A stretch of DNA of 64,000 nucleotides, taken from positions 62,001 through 126,000 of the IMG/VR virus record IMGVR_UViG_3300043411_000942, one strand, 5' to 3'. A program made the position numbers and the translations under genes. The notes beneath the pieces are model-generated. The model saw only the letters and a program-made list of their open reading frames with translations, was not told where the DNA came from and did no database searches. Each line of letters starts with the position of its first letter. Within the stretch, counting starts at the first letter, position 1. Shown piece after piece: positions 1-62,785 of the stretch.

Positions 1-16
1 GGTAAGGGTTGAACCA

Positions 17-277
17 GTGATCTTCGAGCCAGGCTACTACTGGATCAAAGGTCATGGTGTCTGTAAGTACTCCCATGCCACTGGAGGGCTAGCTTACAAC
101 ACTGGGGAGCCTACTCACGTTGTGAACCCCTACCAGTTCGATTCAAACAAATTTGAAGGGAACCTCTACATCGAAACTTCGGACATCACCAGACCAGCGT
201 CTGAAAAAGAAGCCAAGTCGTACAAGGCAGCAGTTCGGAGAAAGCTCACGTCTTCAGGCGTGAAAAGAAAAAACTAG
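17..277 (+). CDS. hypothetical protein
   Basis: 86 aa ORF ending immediately at the first class-1 promoter. Confidence 0.6.
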   Translation: MIFEPGYYWIKGHGVCKYSHATGGLAYNTGEPTHVVNPYQFDSNKFEGNLYIETSDITRPASEKEAKSYKAAVRRKLTSSGVKRKN

Positions 278-305
278 TTAAGGCCGTTACCCCAAAGGAC
301 GTAGG
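277..305 (+). promoter_or_regulatory. class-1 promoter GTTAAG-N17-CGTAGG
   Basis: ATG 313. Other + copies: 1373, 1702, 2020, 3171, 4359, 5196, 6828, 7432, 8996, 10084, 11161, 11834, 12129, 13753, 14059, 15700, 18642, 39895, 45213. Confidence 0.85.
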
Positions 306-3165: not shown

Positions 3166-3206
3166 AACCAGTTAAGAGCCACTCTCAAGAAAACGTAGGT
3201 CTCAAT

Positions 3207-35115: not shown

Positions 35116-35150
35116 GTCTAGCCCTACGGAAGTAGAGAGAGTAAGCTTAA

Positions 35151-36311
35151 CTAAAATCTCGCCTGTTGGGCCAGGTCGATACACAGGCCGTCTATTCTGT
35201 GCAGGTCTGGCTTCTTAGGGAGCTTCGACACCTTAGCCAGCTCGGTTAGCTCCACGTCTTGCTTCGCTGCCCACTCGACAAGCTCGTAATAGTTCCAAGC
35301 CCCTGCTCGAATGCGTAGCAGGTCCTCAGCGTCCGGACGTCGCACAACAACCTTACCTTCAGTGAGGATTTCGCGGCACATTCGTAGGAGTCTCACTAGG
35401 TGCATGGCATGTTTCGTGTCGTACCCAAACTGCTCTTCTAGTTTCGCACGATCTGGATTGCGATTCTTCTTCCAATCTTGAAATTGCTGCCACTCTCGCA
35501 GTTTACTCGTGTAGCGTCGCTCCAAGTCGAGCAACTCAATGAAGTTCGTTGAAAACCCAAGGGAGTTCGCTGCTGCGTTCCAGGTCTTCTCTTCGACGTC
35601 TTTCCAGGACCACTTGGTGATCTCTAGCAGCCTACGGTAGAACTCGTCCTTAATGGATTGCCGGTTGGCTGGACCAAGCTCCTCTAGCTCGTGCCAATTC
35701 CACTCGTCCATGCGCTTATTGATTGTAGCGGAGGCAGCTGCAAGCTGATCTGCCGGGATAAGCGTGTGCTCAGGTAGATTAAACTCTGCTCGTGTTGGAG
35801 GCGCTACAGGAGGAGTCTTAATCCATCTGTAGTGAGTGTTGATTCTCTTGAGTTGTTGAGTCGCATACCCACTGAACGTGTGCTTTGCACGCTGAGAGAG
35901 GAACAGCTCGCGACTCCCCAGGAGGGTTGTCCCCAATGGGGACACGACCAGGTGGTCACTTTCGTCCGTGTAGAGGATCTCAAGAACGTTTGGATTACAC
36001 TCAGCCGCAAGTTTCATGAACTTGCGGAGTTCGAAGATCGTCAAGTCAGGCTCGGACTGAGTGACCTGCTCTACCGTGTTCAAAAACCCTAGGTAGTACT
36101 CACGCGGAGCGATCATGACTCCGCGTAGATCAAGATCGCTTGTAGGGAGGTTCGTCCCATAGGCGTGACTACCGTGACGAGTCAGGTAGATTGTCCGACT
36201 CGGTACCCACGATAAGTTACCTGAATACACGGGCTTCCAATCAAAGAGAAGCGTACTCTTGACTGGGATCAAGTCACTCCTTGGTGTATCCATGGAACCA
36301 CCCTTCTCCAC
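35151..36311 (-). CDS. Pol-beta-superfamily nucleotidyltransferase (Nuc-transf/YcgL-like)
   Basis: HGSHAYGTNLPTSDLDLRGV, NPNVLEIL, YDTKHAMHLVRLL. Confidence 0.9.
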   Translation of the reverse strand: MEKGGSMDTPRSDLIPVKSTLLFDWKPVYSGNLSWVPSRTIYLTRHGSHAYGTNLPTSDLDLRGVMIAPREYYLGFLNTVEQVTQSEPDLTIFELRKFMKLAAECNPNVLEILYTDESDHLVVSPLGTTLLGSRELFLSQRAKHTFSGYATQQLKRINTHYRWIKTPPVAPPTRAEFNLPEHTLIPADQLAAASATINKRMDEWNWHELEELGPANRQSIKDEFYRRLLEITKWSWKDVEEKTWNAAANSLGFSTNFIELLDLERRYTSKLREWQQFQDWKKNRNPDRAKLEEQFGYDTKHAMHLVRLLRMCREILTEGKVVVRRPDAEDLLRIRAGAWNYYELVEWAAKQDVELTELAKVSKLPKKPDLHRIDGLCIDLAQQARF

Positions 36312-56039: not shown

Positions 56040-57122
56040 TTAACGTAGGAACATGGGAGGTGGTTTGGGGGCCTCACCCACCTGAGGTAGTTCCTGCTTT
56101 TCCCAACTATCAATCAGACCGTCGAGTAGTTTGATGTCCTTCTTCAAATCCGAGATAAGACCCGTGGTAGTTTGAATTCGATCCTTGACTCGGTCATCCC
56201 ACTCTCGCTGACCTAGGTCCTCAAGCGTTAGCTTTCTCCCCTGCGTTGTGTACAACACAAGTACCCTGCCAGCTTGGAGGTCACGTAGAGAAGACTCGGA
56301 GTCCCGCACGGAGTCATGCAAGACTTTCACAAGGTGCTGCGTGCCCTTAGGGCTCAGCTCAAACGGCTGGTAGCCAACACCAAGACACCTACCCTGCACT
56401 TGCCCCCAACCTGGACGCTCGTACCCGTGTAGGACGACCATGTAGTCATCCCCTTGACGTTTGAGCTTGATGTTCCGAAAGCAGCAAGGACACGTACCCG
56501 TGTTCTCACGAGTGCGAGGCTTTGACTCCTCACGCTCCCGCTCATACGTGCTCACTCCAAGTGCATTGGACACCTGAGTTAGGAAACTCGTACTCTCTCG
56601 CAACCACTTGCGAATCTCGTAGTATGGTATCTTCTTAGGATCCGAATACTGAACGTAGTAACTCCTACTTGGTAGTAGCTCAAAGACAGCGCCTTCAGGT
56701 GATGTAAATCGAAGCCCGTTTGCACCTACCCACTCAAGGAAGGAGTAGCCGGTTAGGTCGAAGTTAAAGCCCTCGGAGGTAGGAGCAGTTACATCCATCG
56801 TGTAATGCTTCATCGCTTGCGGGCTGGACGGTAGAGACCTTACCTCTAAGTCCTTAGTTAGCTCCCATCTTGCTTGAACCGTTAACGGATTAGAGTCGGT
56901 TTCCAGATTTGGAGCATTAGGATCTTGCGGGTACCCGTGTAGTTGAACCAAGCCGACGAAAGGCTCTACAGTCCAGCCTCCAAGGTACTGAAGAACTTCA
57001 AGTAGTTGCTTCATCGTAATGCTGGAGTCAGCTCCCTTACGGAGCTTGACAAGAAGCGCCTTTACCTTCTCCTCGCTAAGAGCGGCAGCGTAGCGGGAGA
57101 CTACATTTTCTATTAGAGCCAT
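56040..57122 (-). CDS. hypothetical protein with N-terminal NVVSRY motif and Zn-binding C-domain
   Basis: GTCPCCFR..HGYERPGWG..C.G. Confidence 0.75.
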   Translation of the reverse strand: MALIENVVSRYAAALSEEKVKALLVKLRKGADSSITMKQLLEVLQYLGGWTVEPFVGLVQLHGYPQDPNAPNLETDSNPLTVQARWELTKDLEVRSLPSSPQAMKHYTMDVTAPTSEGFNFDLTGYSFLEWVGANGLRFTSPEGAVFELLPSRSYYVQYSDPKKIPYYEIRKWLRESTSFLTQVSNALGVSTYEREREESKPRTRENTGTCPCCFRNIKLKRQGDDYMVVLHGYERPGWGQVQGRCLGVGYQPFELSPKGTQHLVKVLHDSVRDSESSLRDLQAGRVLVLYTTQGRKLTLEDLGQREWDDRVKDRIQTTTGLISDLKKDIKLLDGLIDSWEKQELPQVGEAPKPPPMFLR

Positions 57123-57193
57123 ACACTTAAGGGTTAGGTATCAAATGACTAGGAGACCACACTACGAGTAGGTAACACACTTATACCCGTAGT

Positions 57194-57859
57194 GTGGGTA
57201 TGGGTAAACTAAACGACTTGACCGGTCAAGTATTTGACAGACTGACTGTCCTACAGAAGGTGCCAGCTCCTCCCACTAAGCCAGGACGTAGGCAAAGAAC
57301 AGAGGCATTTTGGGAGTGTGGTTGTTCTTGCGGCAATTCGAAAGTCGTAGCAGGTCCCAATCTTCGCTCTGGTAATACTCGTTCTTGTGGTTGTGCCCAC
57401 AAAGAGCAGTTAGCTGAGCGAAATCGAATTCTACTTACTCTAGACCCATGGGAGTCCGACATGCGACTATACATTCGGAGACTGGGCTACCGTAAGTTAC
57501 GAGCTAAGTTGGGTTCCAACCAATTCCAAGTGTTAGCCAAAACCCCACAACAGGAAGTACACCCTGGGAATGCAGAATCTTGGGCCCTCACTCTAAGTAG
57601 CTACAAACGATTAGTTTTAGGTGTTTGCTACTACTGTGGTAGGGCTCCAGCTCAACCTGTGCATGGAGCTGCTAGTGCTCTTCTACTTAAGAATGGGATC
57701 GATCGCGTAGACAACACTAAGGGGTACGAGGAATCAAATTGCGTGTCTTGTTGTAAATCATGCAACAAGGAGAAGCGGGCTCAATCGTTAACTGTTTTCG
57801 TTGAAAACACTCGTAGGCGTTACCAATGGCTCAAGTCTAAGGGGTTAATCACCAGTTGA
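57194..57859 (+). CDS. freestanding HNH homing endonuclease
   Basis: DLTGQVFDRLTV, CGCSCGN, SCGC; CYYCG..NGIDRVDN.KGY..NCVSCCKSCN. Confidence 0.85.
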   Translation: MGMGKLNDLTGQVFDRLTVLQKVPAPPTKPGRRQRTEAFWECGCSCGNSKVVAGPNLRSGNTRSCGCAHKEQLAERNRILLTLDPWESDMRLYIRRLGYRKLRAKLGSNQFQVLAKTPQQEVHPGNAESWALTLSSYKRLVLGVCYYCGRAPAQPVHGAASALLLKNGIDRVDNTKGYEESNCVSCCKSCNKEKRAQSLTVFVENTRRRYQWLKSKGLITS

Positions 57860-58454
57860 AGTCACCCTCTGCCTTCTTGTTTCTAAGACGAGCAAGCGTT
57901 AACGGCCCGTATGCCATCATAGCATATACACCACCAGCCCAACGTTTTTTGTCATAGTCGCTACCAGTAGTAAAGGCCCGTTCACGGCGCATCTTAATGT
58001 TGAAGGCCGCTGCATCAATCATTTTCTGGCGATAGGGCTCGTAGATAGGGGCGTGAGCTAACACCCATGTTGCATAATCGACTTCCCCCTCATCATAAAA
58101 TGGCTCGACGGACGGAAACTGGCTCAGTGAGCCATGAACCATCTCGTGAGTCAACTTCTCCAAGGTCTGTCCTGGATTACCCTCTACAGAGGAGCACAGA
58201 CTAATCTGCCCACTCACCATGTCGAAGCTCGCTGTAGCTCCACTCATGTGCATCCCATCTGGGAGCTTAAGTATTCTAGGTTGAGGTTCCGTCCCGAAGG
58301 GACCTAGAGCCTCAACCAGAAAACTGTAAATGCGTGGAGCCCAGTCGACCACAAACTGGTCCCAATCCGAGTTGAACACTTGGCATTGAAATGCCTTGCT
58401 CGACGTCTTCATGGAGGCCGACTTGAGGTACCTCTGAGCTTCAGGAGGGAGCAT
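57849..58454 (-). CDS. HEXXH metallopeptidase-like protein
   Basis: LTHEMVH followed by DEG. Confidence 0.7.
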   Translation of the reverse strand: MLPPEAQRYLKSASMKTSSKAFQCQVFNSDWDQFVVDWAPRIYSFLVEALGPFGTEPQPRILKLPDGMHMSGATASFDMVSGQISLCSSVEGNPGQTLEKLTHEMVHGSLSQFPSVEPFYDEGEVDYATWVLAHAPIYEPYRQKMIDAAAFNIKMRRERAFTTGSDYDKKRWAGGVYAMMAYGPLTLARLRNKKAEGDFNW

Positions 58455-58457
58455 CCC

Positions 58458-59282
58458 TTAGACTTCAGCTCTCTCGTTCTTGACGTCGAAGTGCTTGCGT
58501 AGTACCGACTTGATTTGGTCCTTGTACTTCAACCAAGCTGGGTGCGACATCGGGTTGTTCTTTAGGAACGGGATCATTTGGTCTCGAACAATCTCGGCGT
58601 CCGTATACCCCTGTAGGAGCAAGTCAAAGTAAAGGTCCAGGTCTGGAGTGACCCTGGGGTTTACCTTCCTAGCCAATTCATCTCGGATGTTGTCCAAGTC
58701 ACTCTCTAGAAGGTACTTGTCGAGGTGGTCCCAAGCCCCTGGGTCCTCAATGACCCTCTCAACGCCTTCCAGGTCCGTCATGGAATCCGTGATACTCTTG
58801 TCTTCATCCCCTCTGGTGTCATGCCTAAACTGGTCGATAGCTAGCATGTTGAGGGCCGTAAGGATATAGCTTTCTGCTCTCTTTAGAGGTTGACCTGATA
58901 GGTTCCGTAGGGAGTCAGGCTTAGCTAGAAACTTGAGCATTAGCTCCGTCATCAGGTCTTCTGCTCGGTTCGGATCGCGATGCTTCATGAGTAGCATCTT
59001 GTAAGCCTTCGAGCCAAAGTTGGCGCCGTAACCACTAGGGATCTTACGGTCCATCTCTCGTGCGTTCTGAGGCTTGAAGTTCTCAGCAGGTTGATCCTTG
59101 ATGGGTGGAAGTCCCTCCACCCCGTTCATCAAGAATAACCCGTAGATAACTCTCCCGAACCCAGCAGCGGGCCCAGCTGCTAGCTTCACTAGAAGGTTAG
59201 CCAGCCTATATCCCCATGGAAGGCTGGCATATACCTTACGACCTAACTCACTAGCGACTCTTACTAAGGCGTGTGTATCCAT
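58458..59282 (-). CDS. ECF-like RNA polymerase sigma factor with N-terminal RVAS motif
   Basis: AEDLMTELMLKF..SYILTALNMLAIDQFR (sigma2-like); LLLQGYTDAEI (sigma4-like). Confidence 0.65.
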   Translation of the reverse strand: MDTHALVRVASELGRKVYASLPWGYRLANLLVKLAAGPAAGFGRVIYGLFLMNGVEGLPPIKDQPAENFKPQNAREMDRKIPSGYGANFGSKAYKMLLMKHRDPNRAEDLMTELMLKFLAKPDSLRNLSGQPLKRAESYILTALNMLAIDQFRHDTRGDEDKSITDSMTDLEGVERVIEDPGAWDHLDKYLLESDLDNIRDELARKVNPRVTPDLDLYFDLLLQGYTDAEIVRDQMIPFLKNNPMSHPAWLKYKDQIKSVLRKHFDVKNERAEV

Positions 59283-59308
59283 TACGGATAGTCTACGATA
59301 AAAGGATT

Positions 59309-60472
59309 CTACATCCCCCGAGAGACCATCCGCTGAGTGCCCTTTACGGACAACCCAATGGTGGTTGCAATCTCATTGAGATTGCAACCTTCGCTGAGAA
59401 GCTTAAGGATCTCAGCCTCACGCTCCTGGTTCCCCTCCGCAGACCAGCCCAGAGCCTTGCGGCTAGACTTACCAGAGGCAATCAGCTTCACAGTTTGAGT
59501 AAGGTCCACAATGACCTCTTGCTGGCATCCATGAGGGTCGACGATAGCACTCTCCCATGAGACCTCTTCGCTACCCTCTCTTGGGGTGACAACAATCTCC
59601 TTGTGCCTACGAGACTTGGTTCGCAACCAGTTCACATAGATATTGAAGACAGCTCGGTACAAGTACTGCTTGAAGGTACCACGAGTCCTAGGAAGGTGAG
59701 GAGACCCAGAGGTATCGTAATCAACGACCTTCCGACCTTTGATTCGGAACTCCTCCCGAATCGCCTCGTACTTCTCAATGTCTGCCTTAGAGTAAGTAGC
59801 CTCAGAGGACATGCAATCCCCACTAATAGGAGATGGCGCCCACTGACCCTTTAACCTAGGGCAACAAAAGAGGCACAAGGTGTGCACTTCCGAGAGGGTA
59901 GGTTCAAGACTACTCACTTCCGCATTACCCGTACGGTACAAGTAGAAGTTTTGGAAACGAGAAACCACCCAAAAGACTTGACGGGTCTTAGGGATCCCGA
60001 ACTCCCGCTGAAGGTTCTCTCGTTCCTCCTCTTGAAGGTCCTTGGACATCAACCTAAGCTTGCTAGCATAGGAATTCATGTCGGTACCACAAGAAGAGCA
60101 TACTCCGTGGTCCCTACTCTCCACTTCCTCTAGAAGAGCCTTAGAGGGACGCTCTACCTTCAATCCCTTAGGAAAGACTCCCAAGACGTATCGGTATACC
60201 GCCATCTTGAAAGCACTTTCTTGCATCTTCAGGTAAGCAGCAGCTGAGGAAGCTGTCACAACCTCAGGCAACCTTACCGAGTAGGAGTTGTCATACTTCC
60301 TTAGGAAGTCGGCTTCAAACAACTTGAGCCAGACATGCTGGATGATATCCGCCGAGTTATCAGCTACCTTGTTAGCCTTTCGGATCGCACTACTCACAAA
60401 GGTGGAGTAATGCTTTACGAAGTCGTTGTTGTTCTTAGGTACGTAGTCTTCATCAGTCTTTTTAACAAGCAT
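59309..60472 (-). CDS. ECF-like sigma factor with a large insertion inside sigma2
   Basis: DIIQHVWLKLF ... FKQYLYRAVFNIYVNWLRT ... EILKLLSEGCNLNEIATTIGLS; own class-1 promoter 60480-60508. Confidence 0.72.
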   Translation of the reverse strand: MLVKKTDEDYVPKNNNDFVKHYSTFVSSAIRKANKVADNSADIIQHVWLKLFEADFLRKYDNSYSVRLPEVVTASSAAAYLKMQESAFKMAVYRYVLGVFPKGLKVERPSKALLEEVESRDHGVCSSCGTDMNSYASKLRLMSKDLQEEERENLQREFGIPKTRQVFWVVSRFQNFYLYRTGNAEVSSLEPTLSEVHTLCLFCCPRLKGQWAPSPISGDCMSSEATYSKADIEKYEAIREEFRIKGRKVVDYDTSGSPHLPRTRGTFKQYLYRAVFNIYVNWLRTKSRRHKEIVVTPREGSEEVSWESAIVDPHGCQQEVIVDLTQTVKLIASGKSSRKALGWSAEGNQEREAEILKLLSEGCNLNEIATTIGLSVKGTQRMVSRGM

Positions 60473-60479
60473 CGTCTTC

Positions 60480-60508
60480 CTTACGGAAGTTGGAGGTGAA
60501 CACTTAAC
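60480..60508 (-). promoter_or_regulatory. class-1 promoter of the sigma-factor gene
   Basis: GTTAAG-N17-CGTAAG-N7-ATG. Confidence 0.85.
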
Positions 60509-60522
60509 CGAAAACTTGATCC

Positions 60523-60540
60523 CACACACACACACACACA
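60523..60540. repeat. (CA)9 dinucleotide tract
   Basis: read directly. Confidence 0.9.
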
Positions 60541-61109
60541 TGACTACTAGGTAGGATTGAGGTACTGAGGAGGGCTGCTCTATCTAGGGGGGTAGGGTTA
60601 GGATGACTGGTTAGGTTGAAAGGGATGTTCGTATCAGGATGATTGGTTTTTGAGTTAGTTTCGCTACACTATACCAAAAAGAATAAGATCTGATCGGTAT
60701 AGGAGGGGTTAAGGATGGTGGTCCTAGGTAGTAACCCCTATCTGAGTCTACTGAGTCCTTGAGGGACTCTTTGGTCGGAGTGAGTTATGAAGTACCTACC
60801 TCAATGCTCACTTACTTACGGGATCTGCCTAACTTTCCACAACTTCATGTTAGACTGGAGCGACTCATCTTTCAGAGCCTCCTCTCCAAGGAGAGGACCT
60901 TAAGAGACCTTCTAGAGGAAAGAAGCTGACCCCTCTAGACTAACCCACACAGGCTTTTCAAGTACTGATCAGGAAGTGCTGTCACTACTTGTCCTACTTT
61001 CTAGTAGGTATGGAACCCTATAACCCATCCCTCGGTCACTGAGGTTGACCCCTCTCGTATAGACCTGAGAAACCCCTAGCGCAAGTCATTTTGTTCTGGT
61101 ACCCTCTCA

Positions 61110-61451
61110 TTGAGGTATTTCATGTACTTAGCTAGTGTTGTCGAGCTATCCGATGTGAAAGATAGCCCAAAACTACGGGTCAACTTACCTAGCCCTCTAC
61201 TTATCGGCTCCAAGGTGACTTTGAGCTGTAAAGTGCAGCGTAGGAGGGGACCTAGGACAGAGGAGCTTTCGATCCAAGGTGAGTTCAGGGTGGTCTCTTG
61301 TGTCTTCGATGTCGCCAAACAGCGTCAGTTAGTTTCTATCGAGACTACCCAGGTAGCTCCAGTGTGGAGGTCCATTCGAAATCCTCCTCAGAGGGGGTTA
61401 GCTCCTACTCACTCTCACTCCATAGTTGACGGTAAGTTATGTCCGACCTGA
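61110..61451 (+). CDS. hypothetical protein
   Basis: GAGG SD; 113 aa. Confidence 0.6.
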   Translation: MRYFMYLASVVELSDVKDSPKLRVNLPSPLLIGSKVTLSCKVQRRRGPRTEELSIQGEFRVVSCVFDVAKQRQLVSIETTQVAPVWRSIRNPPQRGLAPTHSHSIVDGKLCPT

Positions 61452-61972: not shown

Positions 61973-62749
61973 TTAGGTTCGGTTGACGGCAGCTTCGATG
62001 CTAGCTTTGAGTGCTGCAAGGAGGTCTGTCATAGGAGCCTGAGCCTTCACTGGGGTGTCGATAGCAAGACCTTCCTGCTTCTTGGCTACAGCCTCCTTCA
62101 CCCGTTTGGCGTAGTTGTCCTCGTACTTCTGAGGCTCGAAGGTCTTGGTAGCCAGAGCTTCCACGAGCATGCAAGCAACCTTCTCTTCTGCTTCCATCAC
62201 TTGAGCTTTGGCAGCAGGGACCTCCCCGAAGTCTCGCACTTCGTTGGCGTAGAACATTTGGTGCATCACCAGACCACCCTCGTAGGGGCGGACAAGCACC
62301 AAGTGCTCTCGCCCTCGGTTGGACCACTGAGCCACAGCGATCTTGCCTTGCTTCTTCATGACCTGACTAAGCAGGTAGTAAGACTTGTCACCACCCTTGT
62401 TGGGACCCAGGTAGTAGGACTTCTCGACCTGGAAGACGTTGAAGGCTTCTGCGGGGATAAACTCCTTTATCTCCATGCTGTTTGCGTTCTCGCTATCGAG
62501 AACAGACAGCTCTTCCTTGCTGAAGCGAACAAGGGTTCCGCCCTTCTCGACTTCGTAACCTCGCCCACATTCGGAGTACTCCACAGGGGCTCCCGTGATG
62601 GAGTCGGTATACTTCTGCTTCACCTTGTTGCCAGCAGGAGTGACCATGCACAGGCTTACGGTCTCTGCACTTGCAGAGAGGTAGATTTTGACCGGAACGG
62701 AAACCAGCCCGAAGGACAGGGTTGCACTAGCGATGGATCGAATGCTCAT
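61973..62749 (-). CDS. ku: Ku DNA end-binding protein
   Basis: ATLSFGLVSVPVKIY, RGYEVEKG, EKSYYLGP, KSYYLL, HLVLVRP, DLLAALKAS. Confidence 0.95.
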   Translation of the reverse strand: MSIRSIASATLSFGLVSVPVKIYLSASAETVSLCMVTPAGNKVKQKYTDSITGAPVEYSECGRGYEVEKGGTLVRFSKEELSVLDSENANSMEIKEFIPAEAFNVFQVEKSYYLGPNKGGDKSYYLLSQVMKKQGKIAVAQWSNRGREHLVLVRPYEGGLVMHQMFYANEVRDFGEVPAAKAQVMEAEEKVACMLVEALATKTFEPQKYEDNYAKRVKEAVAKKQEGLAIDTPVKAQAPMTDLLAALKASIEAAVNRT

Positions 62750-62756
62750 ATTATCT

Positions 62757-62785
62757 CTTACGGAAAGGTTTAGGTTCGACTTAAC
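62757..62785 (-). promoter_or_regulatory. class-1 promoter of ku
   Basis: GTTAAG-N17-CGTAAG-N7-ATG. Confidence 0.85.

What the first reader, a model, noticed from the sequence alone, without database searches (positions are those of the whole stretch)
59309..60472. Sigma factor whose sigma2 domain is split by a ~230-aa HTH plus HNH-like insertion
Seen: region 2.1-2.2 (..DIIQHVWLKLF..) at the N-terminus, then an excisionase-like HTH (VVTASSAAAYLKMQESAFKMAV), a degenerate HNH/Zn segment (EVESRDHGVCSSCG...TLCLFCC), then region 2.3-2.4 (FKQYLYRAVFNIYVNWLR) and region 4. There are no intein N- or C-terminal residues. Inference: either a domesticated nuclease/HTH giving the sigma extra DNA-binding or activator function, or an unrecognised mobile insertion. 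It is the best candidate for the class-1 promoter reader.
Basis: partly seen in the sequence, partly recalled or inferred. Interest (0 to 1): 0.65.

Follow-up and report, generated by a model that had tools for sequence, protein, structure and literature searches.

The report
Phage sigma factor with nested insertion
A huge freshwater phage encodes an RNA-polymerase sigma factor whose promoter-melting domain is split by a DNA-binding winged helix, which in turn holds a catalytically dead, zinc-binding HNH nuclease fold; this layout has not been described for sigma factors, and it sits in the loop that normally sets -10 promoter specificity.

Summary
ORF 59309..60472 (-) encodes 387 aa. It is a divergent ECF-like sigma factor, and its sigma2 domain is built from two pieces, about aa 12-66 and 263-295, with sigma4 at about aa 341-387.

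About 197 aa lie between the two sigma2 pieces, and they form two nested domains:
- A MerR/excisionase-type winged HTH (aa ~67-103 plus ~210-262).
- Inside it, a ZRANB3-type HNH fold (aa ~104-209). It keeps its four zinc cysteines but has lost all three catalytic positions.

An exhaustive search found 153 relatives, all from metagenomes and many on contigs of 114-512 kb. The winged HTH is present family-wide. The dead HNH is confined to one clade, which points to a single gain. The insert is under purifying selection (dN/dS 0.15), so it is a domesticated part of the protein, not an intein or a live mobile element.

The gene has its own GTTAAG-N17-CGTAAG promoter ending 7 nt before the ATG. This is the geometry of the class-1 promoters (70 loose matches on the contig; 44 have the 7-nt gap). 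The CGT-type -10 fits an ECF-like reader. However, a second sigma-like gene lies directly downstream and is conserved with it, so which protein reads class-1 promoters remains open. What the insert does is inferred, not shown; extra DNA contacts near the -10 element is my leading guess.

The parts
60480..60508 (-). Class-1-type promoter of the sigma gene: GTTAAG, 17-nt spacer, CGTAAG, then 7 nt to the ATG at 60472. This geometry implies a leaderless mRNA.
   Evidence: consensus and spacing statistics
59309..60472 (-). Whole gene: 387-aa split sigma factor (P0001) plus stop codon
60275..60439 (-). sigma2 N-terminal half (aa ~12-66; regions 2.1-2.2, the helix expected to bind the beta' clamp helices)
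   Evidence: TIGR02937 profile 4-53; Sigma70_r2 profile 2-37; pLDDT 95-98; fold match
60164..60274 (-). Winged HTH, N-terminal half (aa ~67-103; strand plus two HTH helices)
   Evidence: Conserved in the proteins without the HNH insert; MerR/excisionase fold matches over model 70..250; weak profile hit to phage excisionase 4j2n, E 0.48
59846..60163 (-). ZRANB3-type HNH fold with the catalytic residues lost (aa ~104-209). Zinc ligands are Cys125, Cys128, Cys200 and Cys203.
   Evidence: Profile against PDB 5mkw, E 1.3e-8, with residue alignment; Z 7.5; Foldseek prob 0.98; Atlas HNH clusters; alignment A3
59687..59845 (-). Winged HTH, C-terminal half (aa ~210-262; wing with conserved P215 and G218, then a helix, then a linker back to sigma2)
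59588..59686 (-). sigma2 C-terminal half (aa ~263-295; regions 2.3-2.4, with invariant N281 and R284 and near-invariant F267, Y270, L271, R288)
59312..59587 (-). Linker (aa ~296-340) and sigma4 HTH domain (aa ~341-387)
   Evidence: TIGR02937 profile up to position 157-158; weak GerE and HTH_38 hits; model helices 348-386
58458..59282 (-). Downstream partner gene (P0153, 274 aa). It starts 26 nt after the sigma stop codon. It is sigma-like but very divergent, and sits in the same position in all five other related contigs examined. Its role is open: a second sigma or a regulator.
   Evidence: phrog_1740 5e-5; NF058625 3.5e-4; synteny; alignment A4; hhalign against A1 E 1.6e-4, probability 50%

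Best explanation
The gene encodes a phage sigma factor of the sigma70 family with an ECF-like two-domain plan (sigma2 plus sigma4).

Shown:
- The two sigma2 halves (aa ~12-66 and ~263-295) fold together into a normal sigma2 domain.
- A ~197-aa module leaves and re-enters sigma2 between region 2.2 and region 2.3.
- The module is a MerR/excisionase-type winged HTH. In this clade it was itself split by a ZRANB3-type HNH domain.
- That HNH domain keeps its zinc site but has lost the His, Asn and His needed for cleavage, so it cannot be a conventional HNH nuclease.
- The module is old, was gained once, and is kept by selection.

Inferred:
- The protein binds the host RNA polymerase core, because no phage beta or beta' gene is found on the contig.
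- It directs the polymerase to ECF-like promoters of the class GTTAAG-N17-CGTAGG. These sit 7 nt before the start codons, so they would give leaderless mRNAs, including the sigma gene's own mRNA (positive feedback).
- The insertion point corresponds to loop L3, which in ECF sigmas forms the pocket for the flipped -10 nucleotide and sets -10 specificity. The winged HTH and dead HNH are therefore placed beside the -10 element and the upstream fork of the transcription bubble.
- My leading guess is that they add duplex-DNA or fork-DNA contacts there. That would partly stand in for the sigma3 domain that ECF sigmas lack, and would fit the unusually long conserved -10 element, T(A/C)CGTAGG.
For: Architecture:
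- Split TIGR02937 match.
- 71 of 131 relatives hit Sigma70_r2.
- Model pLDDT 83.5.
- Three separate sets of fold matches, to sigma2, HNH and MerR-type wHTH, with nested residue ranges 12..291, 105..208 and 70..250. Foldseek and Atlas agree.

Dead HNH:
- The residue alignment to ZRANB3 puts FW-x-x-E-R/K where ZRANB3 has FW-Q-V-D-H.
- The Asn and the final His positions are variable, and the four Cys are conserved.

Age and selection:
- 153 relatives were found.
- Relatives without the HNH insert match aa 10-98 and 206-380 with about 10 aa between.
- Wing residues P215 and G218 are at least 90% conserved.
- HNH-bearing proteins form one clade nested among those without it.
- dN/dS is 0.147 for the insert and 0.059 for the sigma parts, measured against the 91%-identical relative P0002 (L023).

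Promoters:
- 14 exact matches against 0.04 expected in the window.
- 70 loose matches on the contig against 3-10 in shuffles, 44 of them with exactly 7 nt to the start codon.
- The promoter logo shows T(A/C) just upstream of CGTAGG and A(C/T) just before ATG.
- GTT..CGT motifs lie upstream of the sigma genes in L009, L010 and L012.
- No RNAP beta or beta' family is matched on the contig.

Literature:
- Loop L3 and the CGT -10 hallmark of ECF sigmas are described in PMC4598750, PMC8103513 and bioRxiv 10.1101/381020.
Against: - No curated sigma model reaches its cut-off (TIGR02937 32.2 against 42.9 bits; Sigma70_r2 14 against 24 bits).
- All VIA Z-scores are below 8, a range the tool warns can reflect common helical arrangements.
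- The excisionase assignment is weak at sequence level: HTH_17 is matched by only 4 of 97 insert segments at E up to 0.1, and excisionase 4j2n at E 0.48.
- The relative orientation of the domains is uncertain (pTM 0.60; no PAE or coordinates available), so the claim that the insert faces DNA is not modelled.
- Placing the insertion in loop L3 rests on profile boundaries plus my recollection of the E. coli sigmaE sequence.
- The -35 hexamer GTTAAG lacks the classic ECF AAC.
- Several relatives' sigma genes carry other motifs upstream, for example TATAAT-like in L019, so self-regulation is not universal.
- The contig is estimated at only 49% complete, so a phage RNA polymerase or further sigma genes could lie on the missing part.
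- The conserved sigma-like neighbour is an equally plausible reader of class-1 promoters.
Confidence: 0.6

Rival explanations
1. The insert is a protein-docking or regulatory module, not a DNA reader. It would bind the conserved downstream sigma-like protein (acting as anti-sigma, mimic or co-factor), another phage or host regulator, or a surface of RNA polymerase. Its job would be to gate or time sigma activity.
For: - ECF sigmas are typically co-transcribed with a cognate regulator (PMC8103513).
- The partner gene sits directly downstream in the window and in all five other contigs examined, next to sigmas both with and without the HNH insert.
- Dead nuclease folds and zinc modules are often reused as interaction surfaces (general knowledge).
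Against: - The winged HTH fold class is overwhelmingly DNA-binding.
- The partner accompanies sigmas with and without the HNH insert alike, so it cannot explain the HNH gain.
- The one complex prediction gave no verdict, which is evidence in neither direction.
Confidence: 0.25
2. The protein is a real sigma factor but does not read class-1 promoters. These are read by the neighbouring sigma-like protein P0153, by the two-HTH protein near 183 kb of the contig, or by a host sigma. P0001 would then serve another promoter class.
For: - At least three sigma-related proteins are encoded.
- Class-1 sites are confined to roughly 30-130 kb of the contig, so other promoter classes must exist. A second motif, GGTGTAGTA shortly before an ATG, is seen.
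- If P0001 is made only from a class-1 promoter, something else must start the circuit.
Against: - The -10 CGT core and the two-box layout with a 17-nt spacer are ECF-like, and P0001 is the protein with the best ECF-profile match.
- GTT..CGT motifs lie upstream of this family's genes in four phages examined: the window, L009, L010 and L012.
- A TAGTGTAG-type motif about 190 nt upstream could supply the first transcripts.
Confidence: 0.35
3. The insert is a selfish element caught in the gene, either an intein or an in-frame homing-endonuclease insertion. It would be removed by splicing or merely tolerated.
For: - HNH domains are typical of homing endonucleases.
- Free-standing HNH genes lie near this operon in several phages, and one of them is polymorphic here.
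- The HNH piece most likely did originate as such an insertion.
Against: - No Hint or intein family is matched.
- There is no Cys or Ser at the N-junction and no His-Asn plus Cys/Ser/Thr at the C-junction.
- The catalytic residues are lost in every member.
- The insert is retained down to about 30% identity within one clade, and its dN/dS is 0.13-0.15.
- The contig from an RNA library is collinear with the DNA.
- The neighbouring HNH gene is unrelated to the insert.
Confidence: 0.03
4. The protein does not act as a sigma at all. It would be a sigma-like fold reused as a DNA-binding regulator or as a sigma mimic, as in PhyR.
For: - All curated sigma models score below their cut-offs.
- A PhyR sigma-like domain is among the fold matches (3t0y).
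Against: - Both sigma2 and sigma4 are present in the right order, with a linker of about 45 aa.
- The conserved region 2.3-2.4 residues are kept family-wide.
- There is no receiver or other output domain.
- An abundant ECF-like promoter class exists in the same genome.
Confidence: 0.07

Closest known systems
Group 4 (ECF) sigma factors, e.g. E. coli sigmaE and M. tuberculosis sigmaH and sigmaL (PDB 2mao, 1or7, 5zx2, 6dv9), and phage ECF-like sigmas
   Same: - Two-domain plan of sigma2 plus sigma4 with no sigma1.1 or sigma3, and a linker of about 45 aa.
- Conserved region 2.2 and 2.3-2.4 motifs.
- A two-box promoter with CGT in the -10 element.
- A promoter of its own class in front of its own gene.
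- A co-transcribed downstream partner gene.
   Different: - About 197 aa are inserted within sigma2 at the position of specificity loop L3. Known ECF elaborations are N- or C-terminal extensions or lie in the sigma2-sigma4 linker (my knowledge; no counter-example found).
- Sequence is very remote, below curated cut-offs.
- The -35 element is GTTAAG, not the AAC type.
- Its promoters sit 7 nt from the start codon, implying leaderless mRNAs.
The non-conserved region (NCR) of sigma70 and other lineage-specific insertions in primary sigmas
   Same: A large, lineage-specific domain inserted in or beside sigma2 that leaves the sigma2 fold intact.
   Different: - The NCR lies between regions 1.2 and 2.1, on the opposite side from the -10 pocket loop (established knowledge; PMC4598750 mentions the NCR).
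- Here the insert lies between regions 2.2 and 2.3 and consists of recognisable DNA-binding folds.
HNH domain of human ZRANB3 (PDB 5mkw) and related SNF2-linked, bacterial and giant-virus HNH domains (Pfam PF01844)
   Same: - The same HNH subtype: a CxxC knuckle, a helical excursion, an FW-containing strand, then a second CxxC.
- Profile E 1.3e-8; Z 7.5; 89 residues aligned at 2.8 A.
   Different: - The catalytic Asp-His, the Asn and the last His are all replaced.
- The domain is nested inside another domain of a sigma factor instead of being attached to a helicase or free-standing.
MerR-family and excisionase (HTH_17) winged helix DNA-binding domains, e.g. BmrR, TipAL, SoxR, mycobacteriophage Pukovnik Xis gp37 (PDB 4j2n)
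   Same: - HTH followed by a beta wing and a helix.
- A motif of the type T-x-x-E-A-x-x-x-L-G, with a conserved wing Pro and Gly.
   Different: - It is not an autonomous regulator and has no dimerisation helix or effector domain.
- It is embedded in sigma2, and in this clade it is interrupted between the HTH and the wing by about 105 aa.

Membership tests
sigma70 family, group 4 (ECF-like) sigma factor | sigma2 domain (regions 2.1-2.4) with the canonical fold | tested here: met
   Model residues 12..291 align to many solved sigma2 domains, with 76-92 residues aligned, rmsd 2.6-3.2 A and Z 6-7.8. pLDDT is 95-98 on both halves. The TIGR02937 profile matches in two pieces.
sigma70 family, group 4 (ECF-like) sigma factor | sigma4 HTH domain C-terminal to sigma2, linker under about 50 aa, no sigma1.1 or sigma3 | tested here: met
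   The TIGR02937 match runs to profile position 157 of 165. Model helices span 348-386. There are weak GerE and HTH_38 hits. No sigma3 family is matched.
sigma70 family, group 4 (ECF-like) sigma factor | Score above the curated family cut-off | tested here: not met
   TIGR02937 scores 32.2 bits against a cut-off of 42.9 (E 7.6e-8). Pfam Sigma70_r2 scores 14 bits against 24. The split domain halves the attainable score, and 71 of 131 relatives do hit Sigma70_r2 at E <= 0.01.
sigma70 family, group 4 (ECF-like) sigma factor | Binds RNAP core and confers promoter-specific initiation | not testable with these tools
The only support is indirect: an abundant CGT-type promoter class and no phage RNAP genes on the contig.
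HNH (beta-beta-alpha-Me) endonuclease, ZRANB3 subtype | HNH fold with a structural zinc site (CxxC...CxxC) | tested here: met
   The insert profile hits 5mkw at E 1.3e-8 and Z 7.5. Cys125, Cys128, Cys200 and Cys203 are conserved; C200 and C203 are invariant.
HNH (beta-beta-alpha-Me) endonuclease, ZRANB3 subtype | Catalytic His (general base), Asn, and the metal-binding His or Asn | tested here: not met
   In the residue alignment, D-H of ZRANB3 faces E-R/K in the family (S-R in P0001). The Asn position and the final His position are variable in all 19 rows. The domain has the fold but is not an active nuclease of this family.
MerR/excisionase-type winged HTH (Pfam HTH_17 and relatives) | HTH plus wing fold | tested here: met
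   Model residues 70..250 align to MerR-family DNA-binding domains (3hh0, 5xql, 2vz4, 3d6y, 2zhh) at Z 5.4-6.2, and to 7lxs_A over 54 of 55 residues at 1.9 A. These Z values are moderate.
MerR/excisionase-type winged HTH (Pfam HTH_17 and relatives) | Significant sequence match to the family model | tested here: inconclusive
   HTH_17 is matched by 4 of 131 whole proteins (best 5e-5) and by 4 of 97 excised inserts (best 0.015). The profile against phage excisionase 4j2n gives E 0.48.
Intein / Hint-domain protein-splicing element | Hint fold blocks; Cys or Ser at the intein N-terminus; His-Asn plus Cys/Ser/Thr at the C-junction | tested here: not met
   No Hint or intein family is matched in P0001, in 131 relatives or in the excised inserts. 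The junction sequences are ..YSV/RLP.. and ..HLP/RTRG... Fold matches are to wHTH and HNH only.

The most novel reading that the evidence does not exclude
A family of huge-phage sigma factors has turned the ECF -10 specificity loop into a docking site for a whole DNA-binding module: a winged HTH, joined in one clade by a dead structure-specific nuclease fold. The holoenzyme would then recognise an extended -10 element partly as duplex or fork DNA, not only through one flipped base. That would be a new mode of promoter recognition. It would drive leaderless transcription of a block of about 100 kb in a megaphage found widely in fresh water.
Probability: 0.25. Interest if true: 0.8.

Novelty: new variant of a known kind. 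Interest (0 to 1): 0.62.

Why it matters
Sigma factors are among the best-studied DNA-reading proteins. Their known elaborations sit at the termini, in the sigma2-sigma4 linker, or between regions 1.2 and 2.1.

Here, two recognisable nucleic-acid-binding folds are nested inside the loop that sets -10 specificity in ECF sigmas. This arrangement is conserved across a family of at least 150 sequence clusters from uncultured phages with genomes up to about 0.5 Mb. The family has no member in GenBank phage records.

Several questions become testable:
- How a sigma2 domain tolerates and uses such an insert.
- Whether promoter melting can be assisted by a fork-binding dead nuclease.
- How megaphages run their transcription programmes with the host polymerase.

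The family also offers natural, compact, probably orthogonal sigma-promoter pairs with leaderless output.

Tried and rejected
- Single-sequence AlphaFold2 failed (pLDDT 36). It was replaced by a run on a 131-sequence alignment.
- The word-index protein search found only one relative, so the exhaustive search was needed.
- phmmer of P0001 and of the uninterrupted relative P0142 against PDB gave nothing useful. The family profile A1 against PDB gave only weak sigma hits.
- tblastn of P0001, P0027 and P0021 against 50,697 GenBank phage records found no match. megablast of the region found no match.
- The search by language-model features with the insert gave only sub-threshold unnamed clusters.
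It was redone with the alignment of HNH-bearing proteins.
- Complex prediction of P0001 with the downstream partner P0153 gave no verdict (score 0.00 against a mark of 0.32). This is evidence neither for nor against binding.
- hhalign of the insert against the neighbouring free-standing HNH endonuclease showed no relation.
- Rfam and folding of the intergenic region upstream of the gene gave no family, with z-scores of -1.9 and -1.1.
- Seven literature searches found no description of a sigma factor split in sigma2 by wHTH or HNH domains. The library lacks most subscription journals, so this is weak evidence of absence.
- The exact GTTAAG/CGTAGG motif does not occur in the relatives' loci L009 and L010. 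Related GTT..CGT motifs do.
Full report
**Setting.** The window is bases 62001-126000 of a 232,937-bp IMG/VR viral contig that CheckV rates 49% complete. It therefore belongs to a phage of several hundred kb. A 99%-identical copy of the gene lies on a 379,936-bp IMG/VR contig. Near-identical DNA occurs in freshwater, groundwater, wastewater, runoff and riverine metagenomes. Twelve runs other than the two possible source samples hold three quarters or more of the sampled words, and they come from nine studies. No RNA-polymerase beta or beta' family is matched on the contig, with the caveat that about half of the genome is missing.

**The gene.** ORF 59309..60472 (-) encodes 387 aa (P0001). The list of ORFs offers an earlier ATG at 60541, but three results favour 60472:
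- Relatives start at the equivalent position, with the motif ..DYVP.. about 10 residues in.
- GTTAAG-N17-CGTAAG ends exactly 7 nt before the 60472 ATG.
- The extra 23 codons start in a (TG)n run that carries 2-nt indels in other runs.

**Is it a sigma factor?**
- Curated models see it only weakly. Pfam Sigma70_r2 scores 14 bits and GerE 13.5 bits. NCBIfam TIGR02937 (sigma70-ECF) gives E 7.6e-8 and 32.2 bits against a cut-off of 42.9, in two stretches.
- A six-frame search of the genome shows the split exactly: profile positions 4-53 match aa ~16-67, and positions 50-158 match aa 265-387.
- An exhaustive phmmer search of 1.84 billion cluster representatives found 153 relatives at E <= 0.001, 69 of them at <= 1e-10. 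Of 131 aligned relatives, 71 match Sigma70_r2 (best 1e-8). A few match Sigma70_r4, Sigma70_r4_2 or Sigma70_ECF.
- AlphaFold2 on this alignment gives mean pLDDT 83.5, with 95-98 on aa 11-60 and 271-290.
- VIA-align against 48,161 PDB representatives puts sigma2 domains in 19 of the top 20 rows; the exception is the ZRANB3 HNH domain at rank 5. Examples are M. tuberculosis SigE, SigH, SigC and SigK, E. coli sigmaE region 2, S. aureus sigmaB and T4 gp55. Each aligns 73-92 residues spread over model residues ~2-297, at rmsd 2.6-3.9 A and Z 6.3-7.8.
- These Z values are in the range the tool flags as not decisive alone. However, the consistency of the hits, the sequence profile and the family-level Pfam hits all agree. 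I take the sigma identity as established at the level of fold and family. Function is untested.

**The insertion is two nested domains.**
- phmmer mapping shows that relatives of 250-320 aa match aa 10-98 and aa 206-380 of P0001, with only about 10 residues between. So aa ~100-205 is an extra piece found only in the nearest relatives, while aa 64-98 and 206-262 are family-wide.
- In the 131-sequence alignment, all but one member carry at least 74 residues between the sigma2 halves. Wing residues P215 and G218 are at least 90% conserved.
- One 191-aa relative (P0142, E about 1e-4) matches aa 11-63 and 265-364 with 10 residues between. It represents the uninterrupted form.
- Fold matches give the same picture with nested ranges. 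MerR-family and related winged HTH domains align to model 70..250 (Z 5.4-6.2; 7lxs_A 54 of 55 residues at 1.9 A). The human ZRANB3 HNH domain aligns to model 105..208 (Z 7.5, 89 residues, 2.8 A).
- Foldseek (prob 0.98 for 5mkw), BFVD (an HNH protein, prob 1.00) and the ESM Atlas (HNH clusters, a ZRANB3-like cluster, ECF sigma clusters) agree.
- No library entry matches the whole nested arrangement.

**The HNH piece is catalytically dead.**
- A profile of the insert hits ZRANB3 HNH at E 1.3e-8 across nearly the whole domain. The profile was built from 19 rows covering 17 proteins.
- In that alignment the conserved FW of the family matches FW of ZRANB3. The following Asp-His, which carries the catalytic base, faces Glu-Arg/Lys in the family and Ser-Arg in P0001.
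- The Asn before the second zinc knuckle and the His after it are not conserved in any row.
- The four zinc ligands (Cys125, Cys128, Cys200, Cys203) are kept. One member has His in place of the second Cys.
- One member (P0006) carries the module twice in tandem.
- Sequence evidence for the excisionase/HTH_17 assignment of the outer domain is weak. That label rests mainly on the fold and on a motif pattern.

**Domesticated, not mobile.**
- In a tree built on the shared columns, HNH-bearing proteins form one clade nested among those without the insert. The only exceptions are two fragments. This fits a single insertion followed by retention down to about 28-37% identity.
- Against the 91%-identical relative P0002 (L023), dN/dS is 0.13 for the HNH piece, 0 and 0.26 for the two wHTH halves, 0.147 for the whole insert, and 0.059 for the sigma parts. 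This is one pairwise comparison with small counts.
- No intein or Hint family is matched, and the junction residues do not fit an intein.
- A 2,457-nt contig from a wastewater metatranscriptome library (about 93% identical) runs collinearly across both sigma-like genes, and no joints were reported in any run. RNA libraries can contain DNA, so this is supporting evidence only.
- The nearby free-standing HNH endonuclease gene is unrelated to the insert.

**Where the insert sits.** The break falls at TIGR02937 profile position ~50-53 and Sigma70_r2 position ~37 of 71. That is between the region 2.2 helix and the R-G-x-F..Y-L motif that opens region 2.3. In E. coli sigmaE this is loop L3 (residues 63-72). 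Loop L3 forms the pocket for the flipped -10 nucleotide, and swapping it switches -10 specificity (PMC4598750, PMC8103513, bioRxiv 10.1101/381020). The residue-level correspondence uses my recollection of the sigmaE sequence, so it is an inference.

**Promoters.**
- GTTAAG-N15-19-CGTAGG occurs 14 times in the window against 0.04 expected.
- Allowing one mismatch per hexamer and requiring a start codon 5-9 nt downstream gives 70 sites on the contig, against 3-10 in shuffled sequence. Of these, 44 have exactly 7 nt between hexamer and start codon, and 58 use ATG. Sixty-three of the 70 lie between 30 and 130 kb of the contig.
- The logo shows an A-rich stretch upstream of the -35 element, then T(A/C) just before CGTAGG, and A then C/T just before the ATG.
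- This geometry implies that transcription starts at or next to the A of the ATG, giving leaderless mRNAs.
- The sigma gene has such a promoter.
- In relatives, the sigma gene is preceded by related motifs:

| Locus | HNH insert | -35-like motif | -10-like motif |
|---|---|---|---|
| L010 | absent | GTTGATC | CGTAGTAGG |
| L009 | present | GGTTGATAC | CGTGGG |
| L012 | present | GTTGAAG | CGTTTAGGG |

- Other relatives show different motifs, for example TATAAT-like in L019.
- CGT in the -10 element and self-regulation are ECF hallmarks. The -35 element here is not of the AAC type.

**The neighbour.**
- P0153 (58458..59282, 274 aa) starts 26 nt after the sigma stop codon.
- Its homologue occupies the same position in all five other contexts examined, next to sigmas with and without the HNH insert.
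- It has weak sigma matches: phrog_1740 at 5e-5, NF058625 at 3.5e-4 and Sigma70_r2 at 0.003-0.04. hhalign aligns it to regions 2.3 through sigma4 of the family at E 1.6e-4 and probability 50%.
- It may be a second sigma or a regulator.
- A further protein with two sigma4-like HTHs lies near 183 kb of the contig.

**Mechanism, with status.**
- Shown: the nested architecture, the loss of the catalytic residues, family-wide conservation of the wHTH, the single-clade distribution of the HNH piece, purifying selection, and the existence and geometry of the promoter class.
- Inferred: binding to host core polymerase; reading of class-1 promoters; positive feedback; placement of the insert next to the -10 element and upstream fork; extra DNA contacts as its function.
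- The alternative that the insert is a protein-docking surface cannot be excluded. The single complex prediction returned no verdict.

**Novelty.** I found no description of a sigma factor interrupted within sigma2 by wHTH or HNH domains. The family is absent from 50,697 GenBank phage records at the sensitivity of tblastn. Twelve IMG/VR loci carry the HNH-bearing protein, nine of them on contigs of 114-512 kb. I rate it a new variant of a known kind.

**Compliance with the operators' notes.** No genetic code other than table 11 was used. 

Noticed in passing
whole window and contig; e.g. window 277-305, 3171-3199, 35123-35151 (-): Class-1 promoters (A-rich stretch, GTTAAG, N17, CGTAGG) end exactly 7 nt before start codons, which implies leaderless mRNAs. 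There are 70 loose matches on the contig, 44 of them with the 7-nt gap. Sixty-three of the 70 lie between 30 and 130 kb of the contig.
   Followed up: partly
window 57105-58046, containing ORF 57194..57859 (+): A free-standing HNH endonuclease gene (phrog_374, 1.4e-20) is present here and in the 93%-identical contig L023. In the 98-99%-identical contig L002 it is absent, and 943 nt are replaced by 222 nt. This looks like a homing-endonuclease presence/absence polymorphism.
   Followed up: partly
window 60578-61035: The ~550-nt non-coding stretch upstream of the sigma gene is covered by contigs in two RNA libraries, at higher contig depth than the gene itself. In both it ends near 61031-61035. 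There is no Rfam match and no exceptional folding energy. It could be an ncRNA or a long 5' region, and the strand is unknown.
   Followed up: partly
window 60521-60541: A (TG)n microsatellite lies just upstream of the promoter and shows 2-nt indel differences between public runs. It creates a spurious upstream ATG for the ORF.
   Followed up: yes
window 14399, 17464 (+), 34387 (-), and ~60660-60672 (-): A second promoter-like motif, GGTGTAGTA or TAGTGTAG, lies shortly before some start codons and about 190 nt upstream of the sigma gene. Similar GGTGTAGA-type motifs precede genes in L009 and L010, and TAGTGTAGA precedes the sigma gene in L020. It may be a different promoter class that supplies the first sigma transcripts.
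   Followed up: partly
window 61973..62749 (-): A 258-aa ORF with a class-1-like promoter (62757-62785). Its positional counterparts in L009 and L023 carry Pfam Ku. dCTP deaminase, peptide deformylase, AdoMet decarboxylase, a C1 peptidase and N6/N4 methyltransferase genes also recur near the sigma operon in relatives.
   Followed up: no
L004 1375..1992 (G000 about 182.4-183.1 kb, outside the window): A 205-aa protein with two sigma4-like HTH segments and no sigma2 (TIGR02937 positions 109-162, E 1.9e-9). It is another candidate transcription factor of this phage.
   Followed up: no
protein P0006 (relative, 467 aa): This relative carries two tandem copies of the dead-HNH module inside the winged HTH, so the module has been duplicated at least once.
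   Followed up: no
window 58400-61400: Near-identical DNA is found in freshwater, groundwater, wastewater, runoff, aquatic and riverine metagenomes from several studies, so the phage is geographically widespread. The host is unknown.
   Followed up: no
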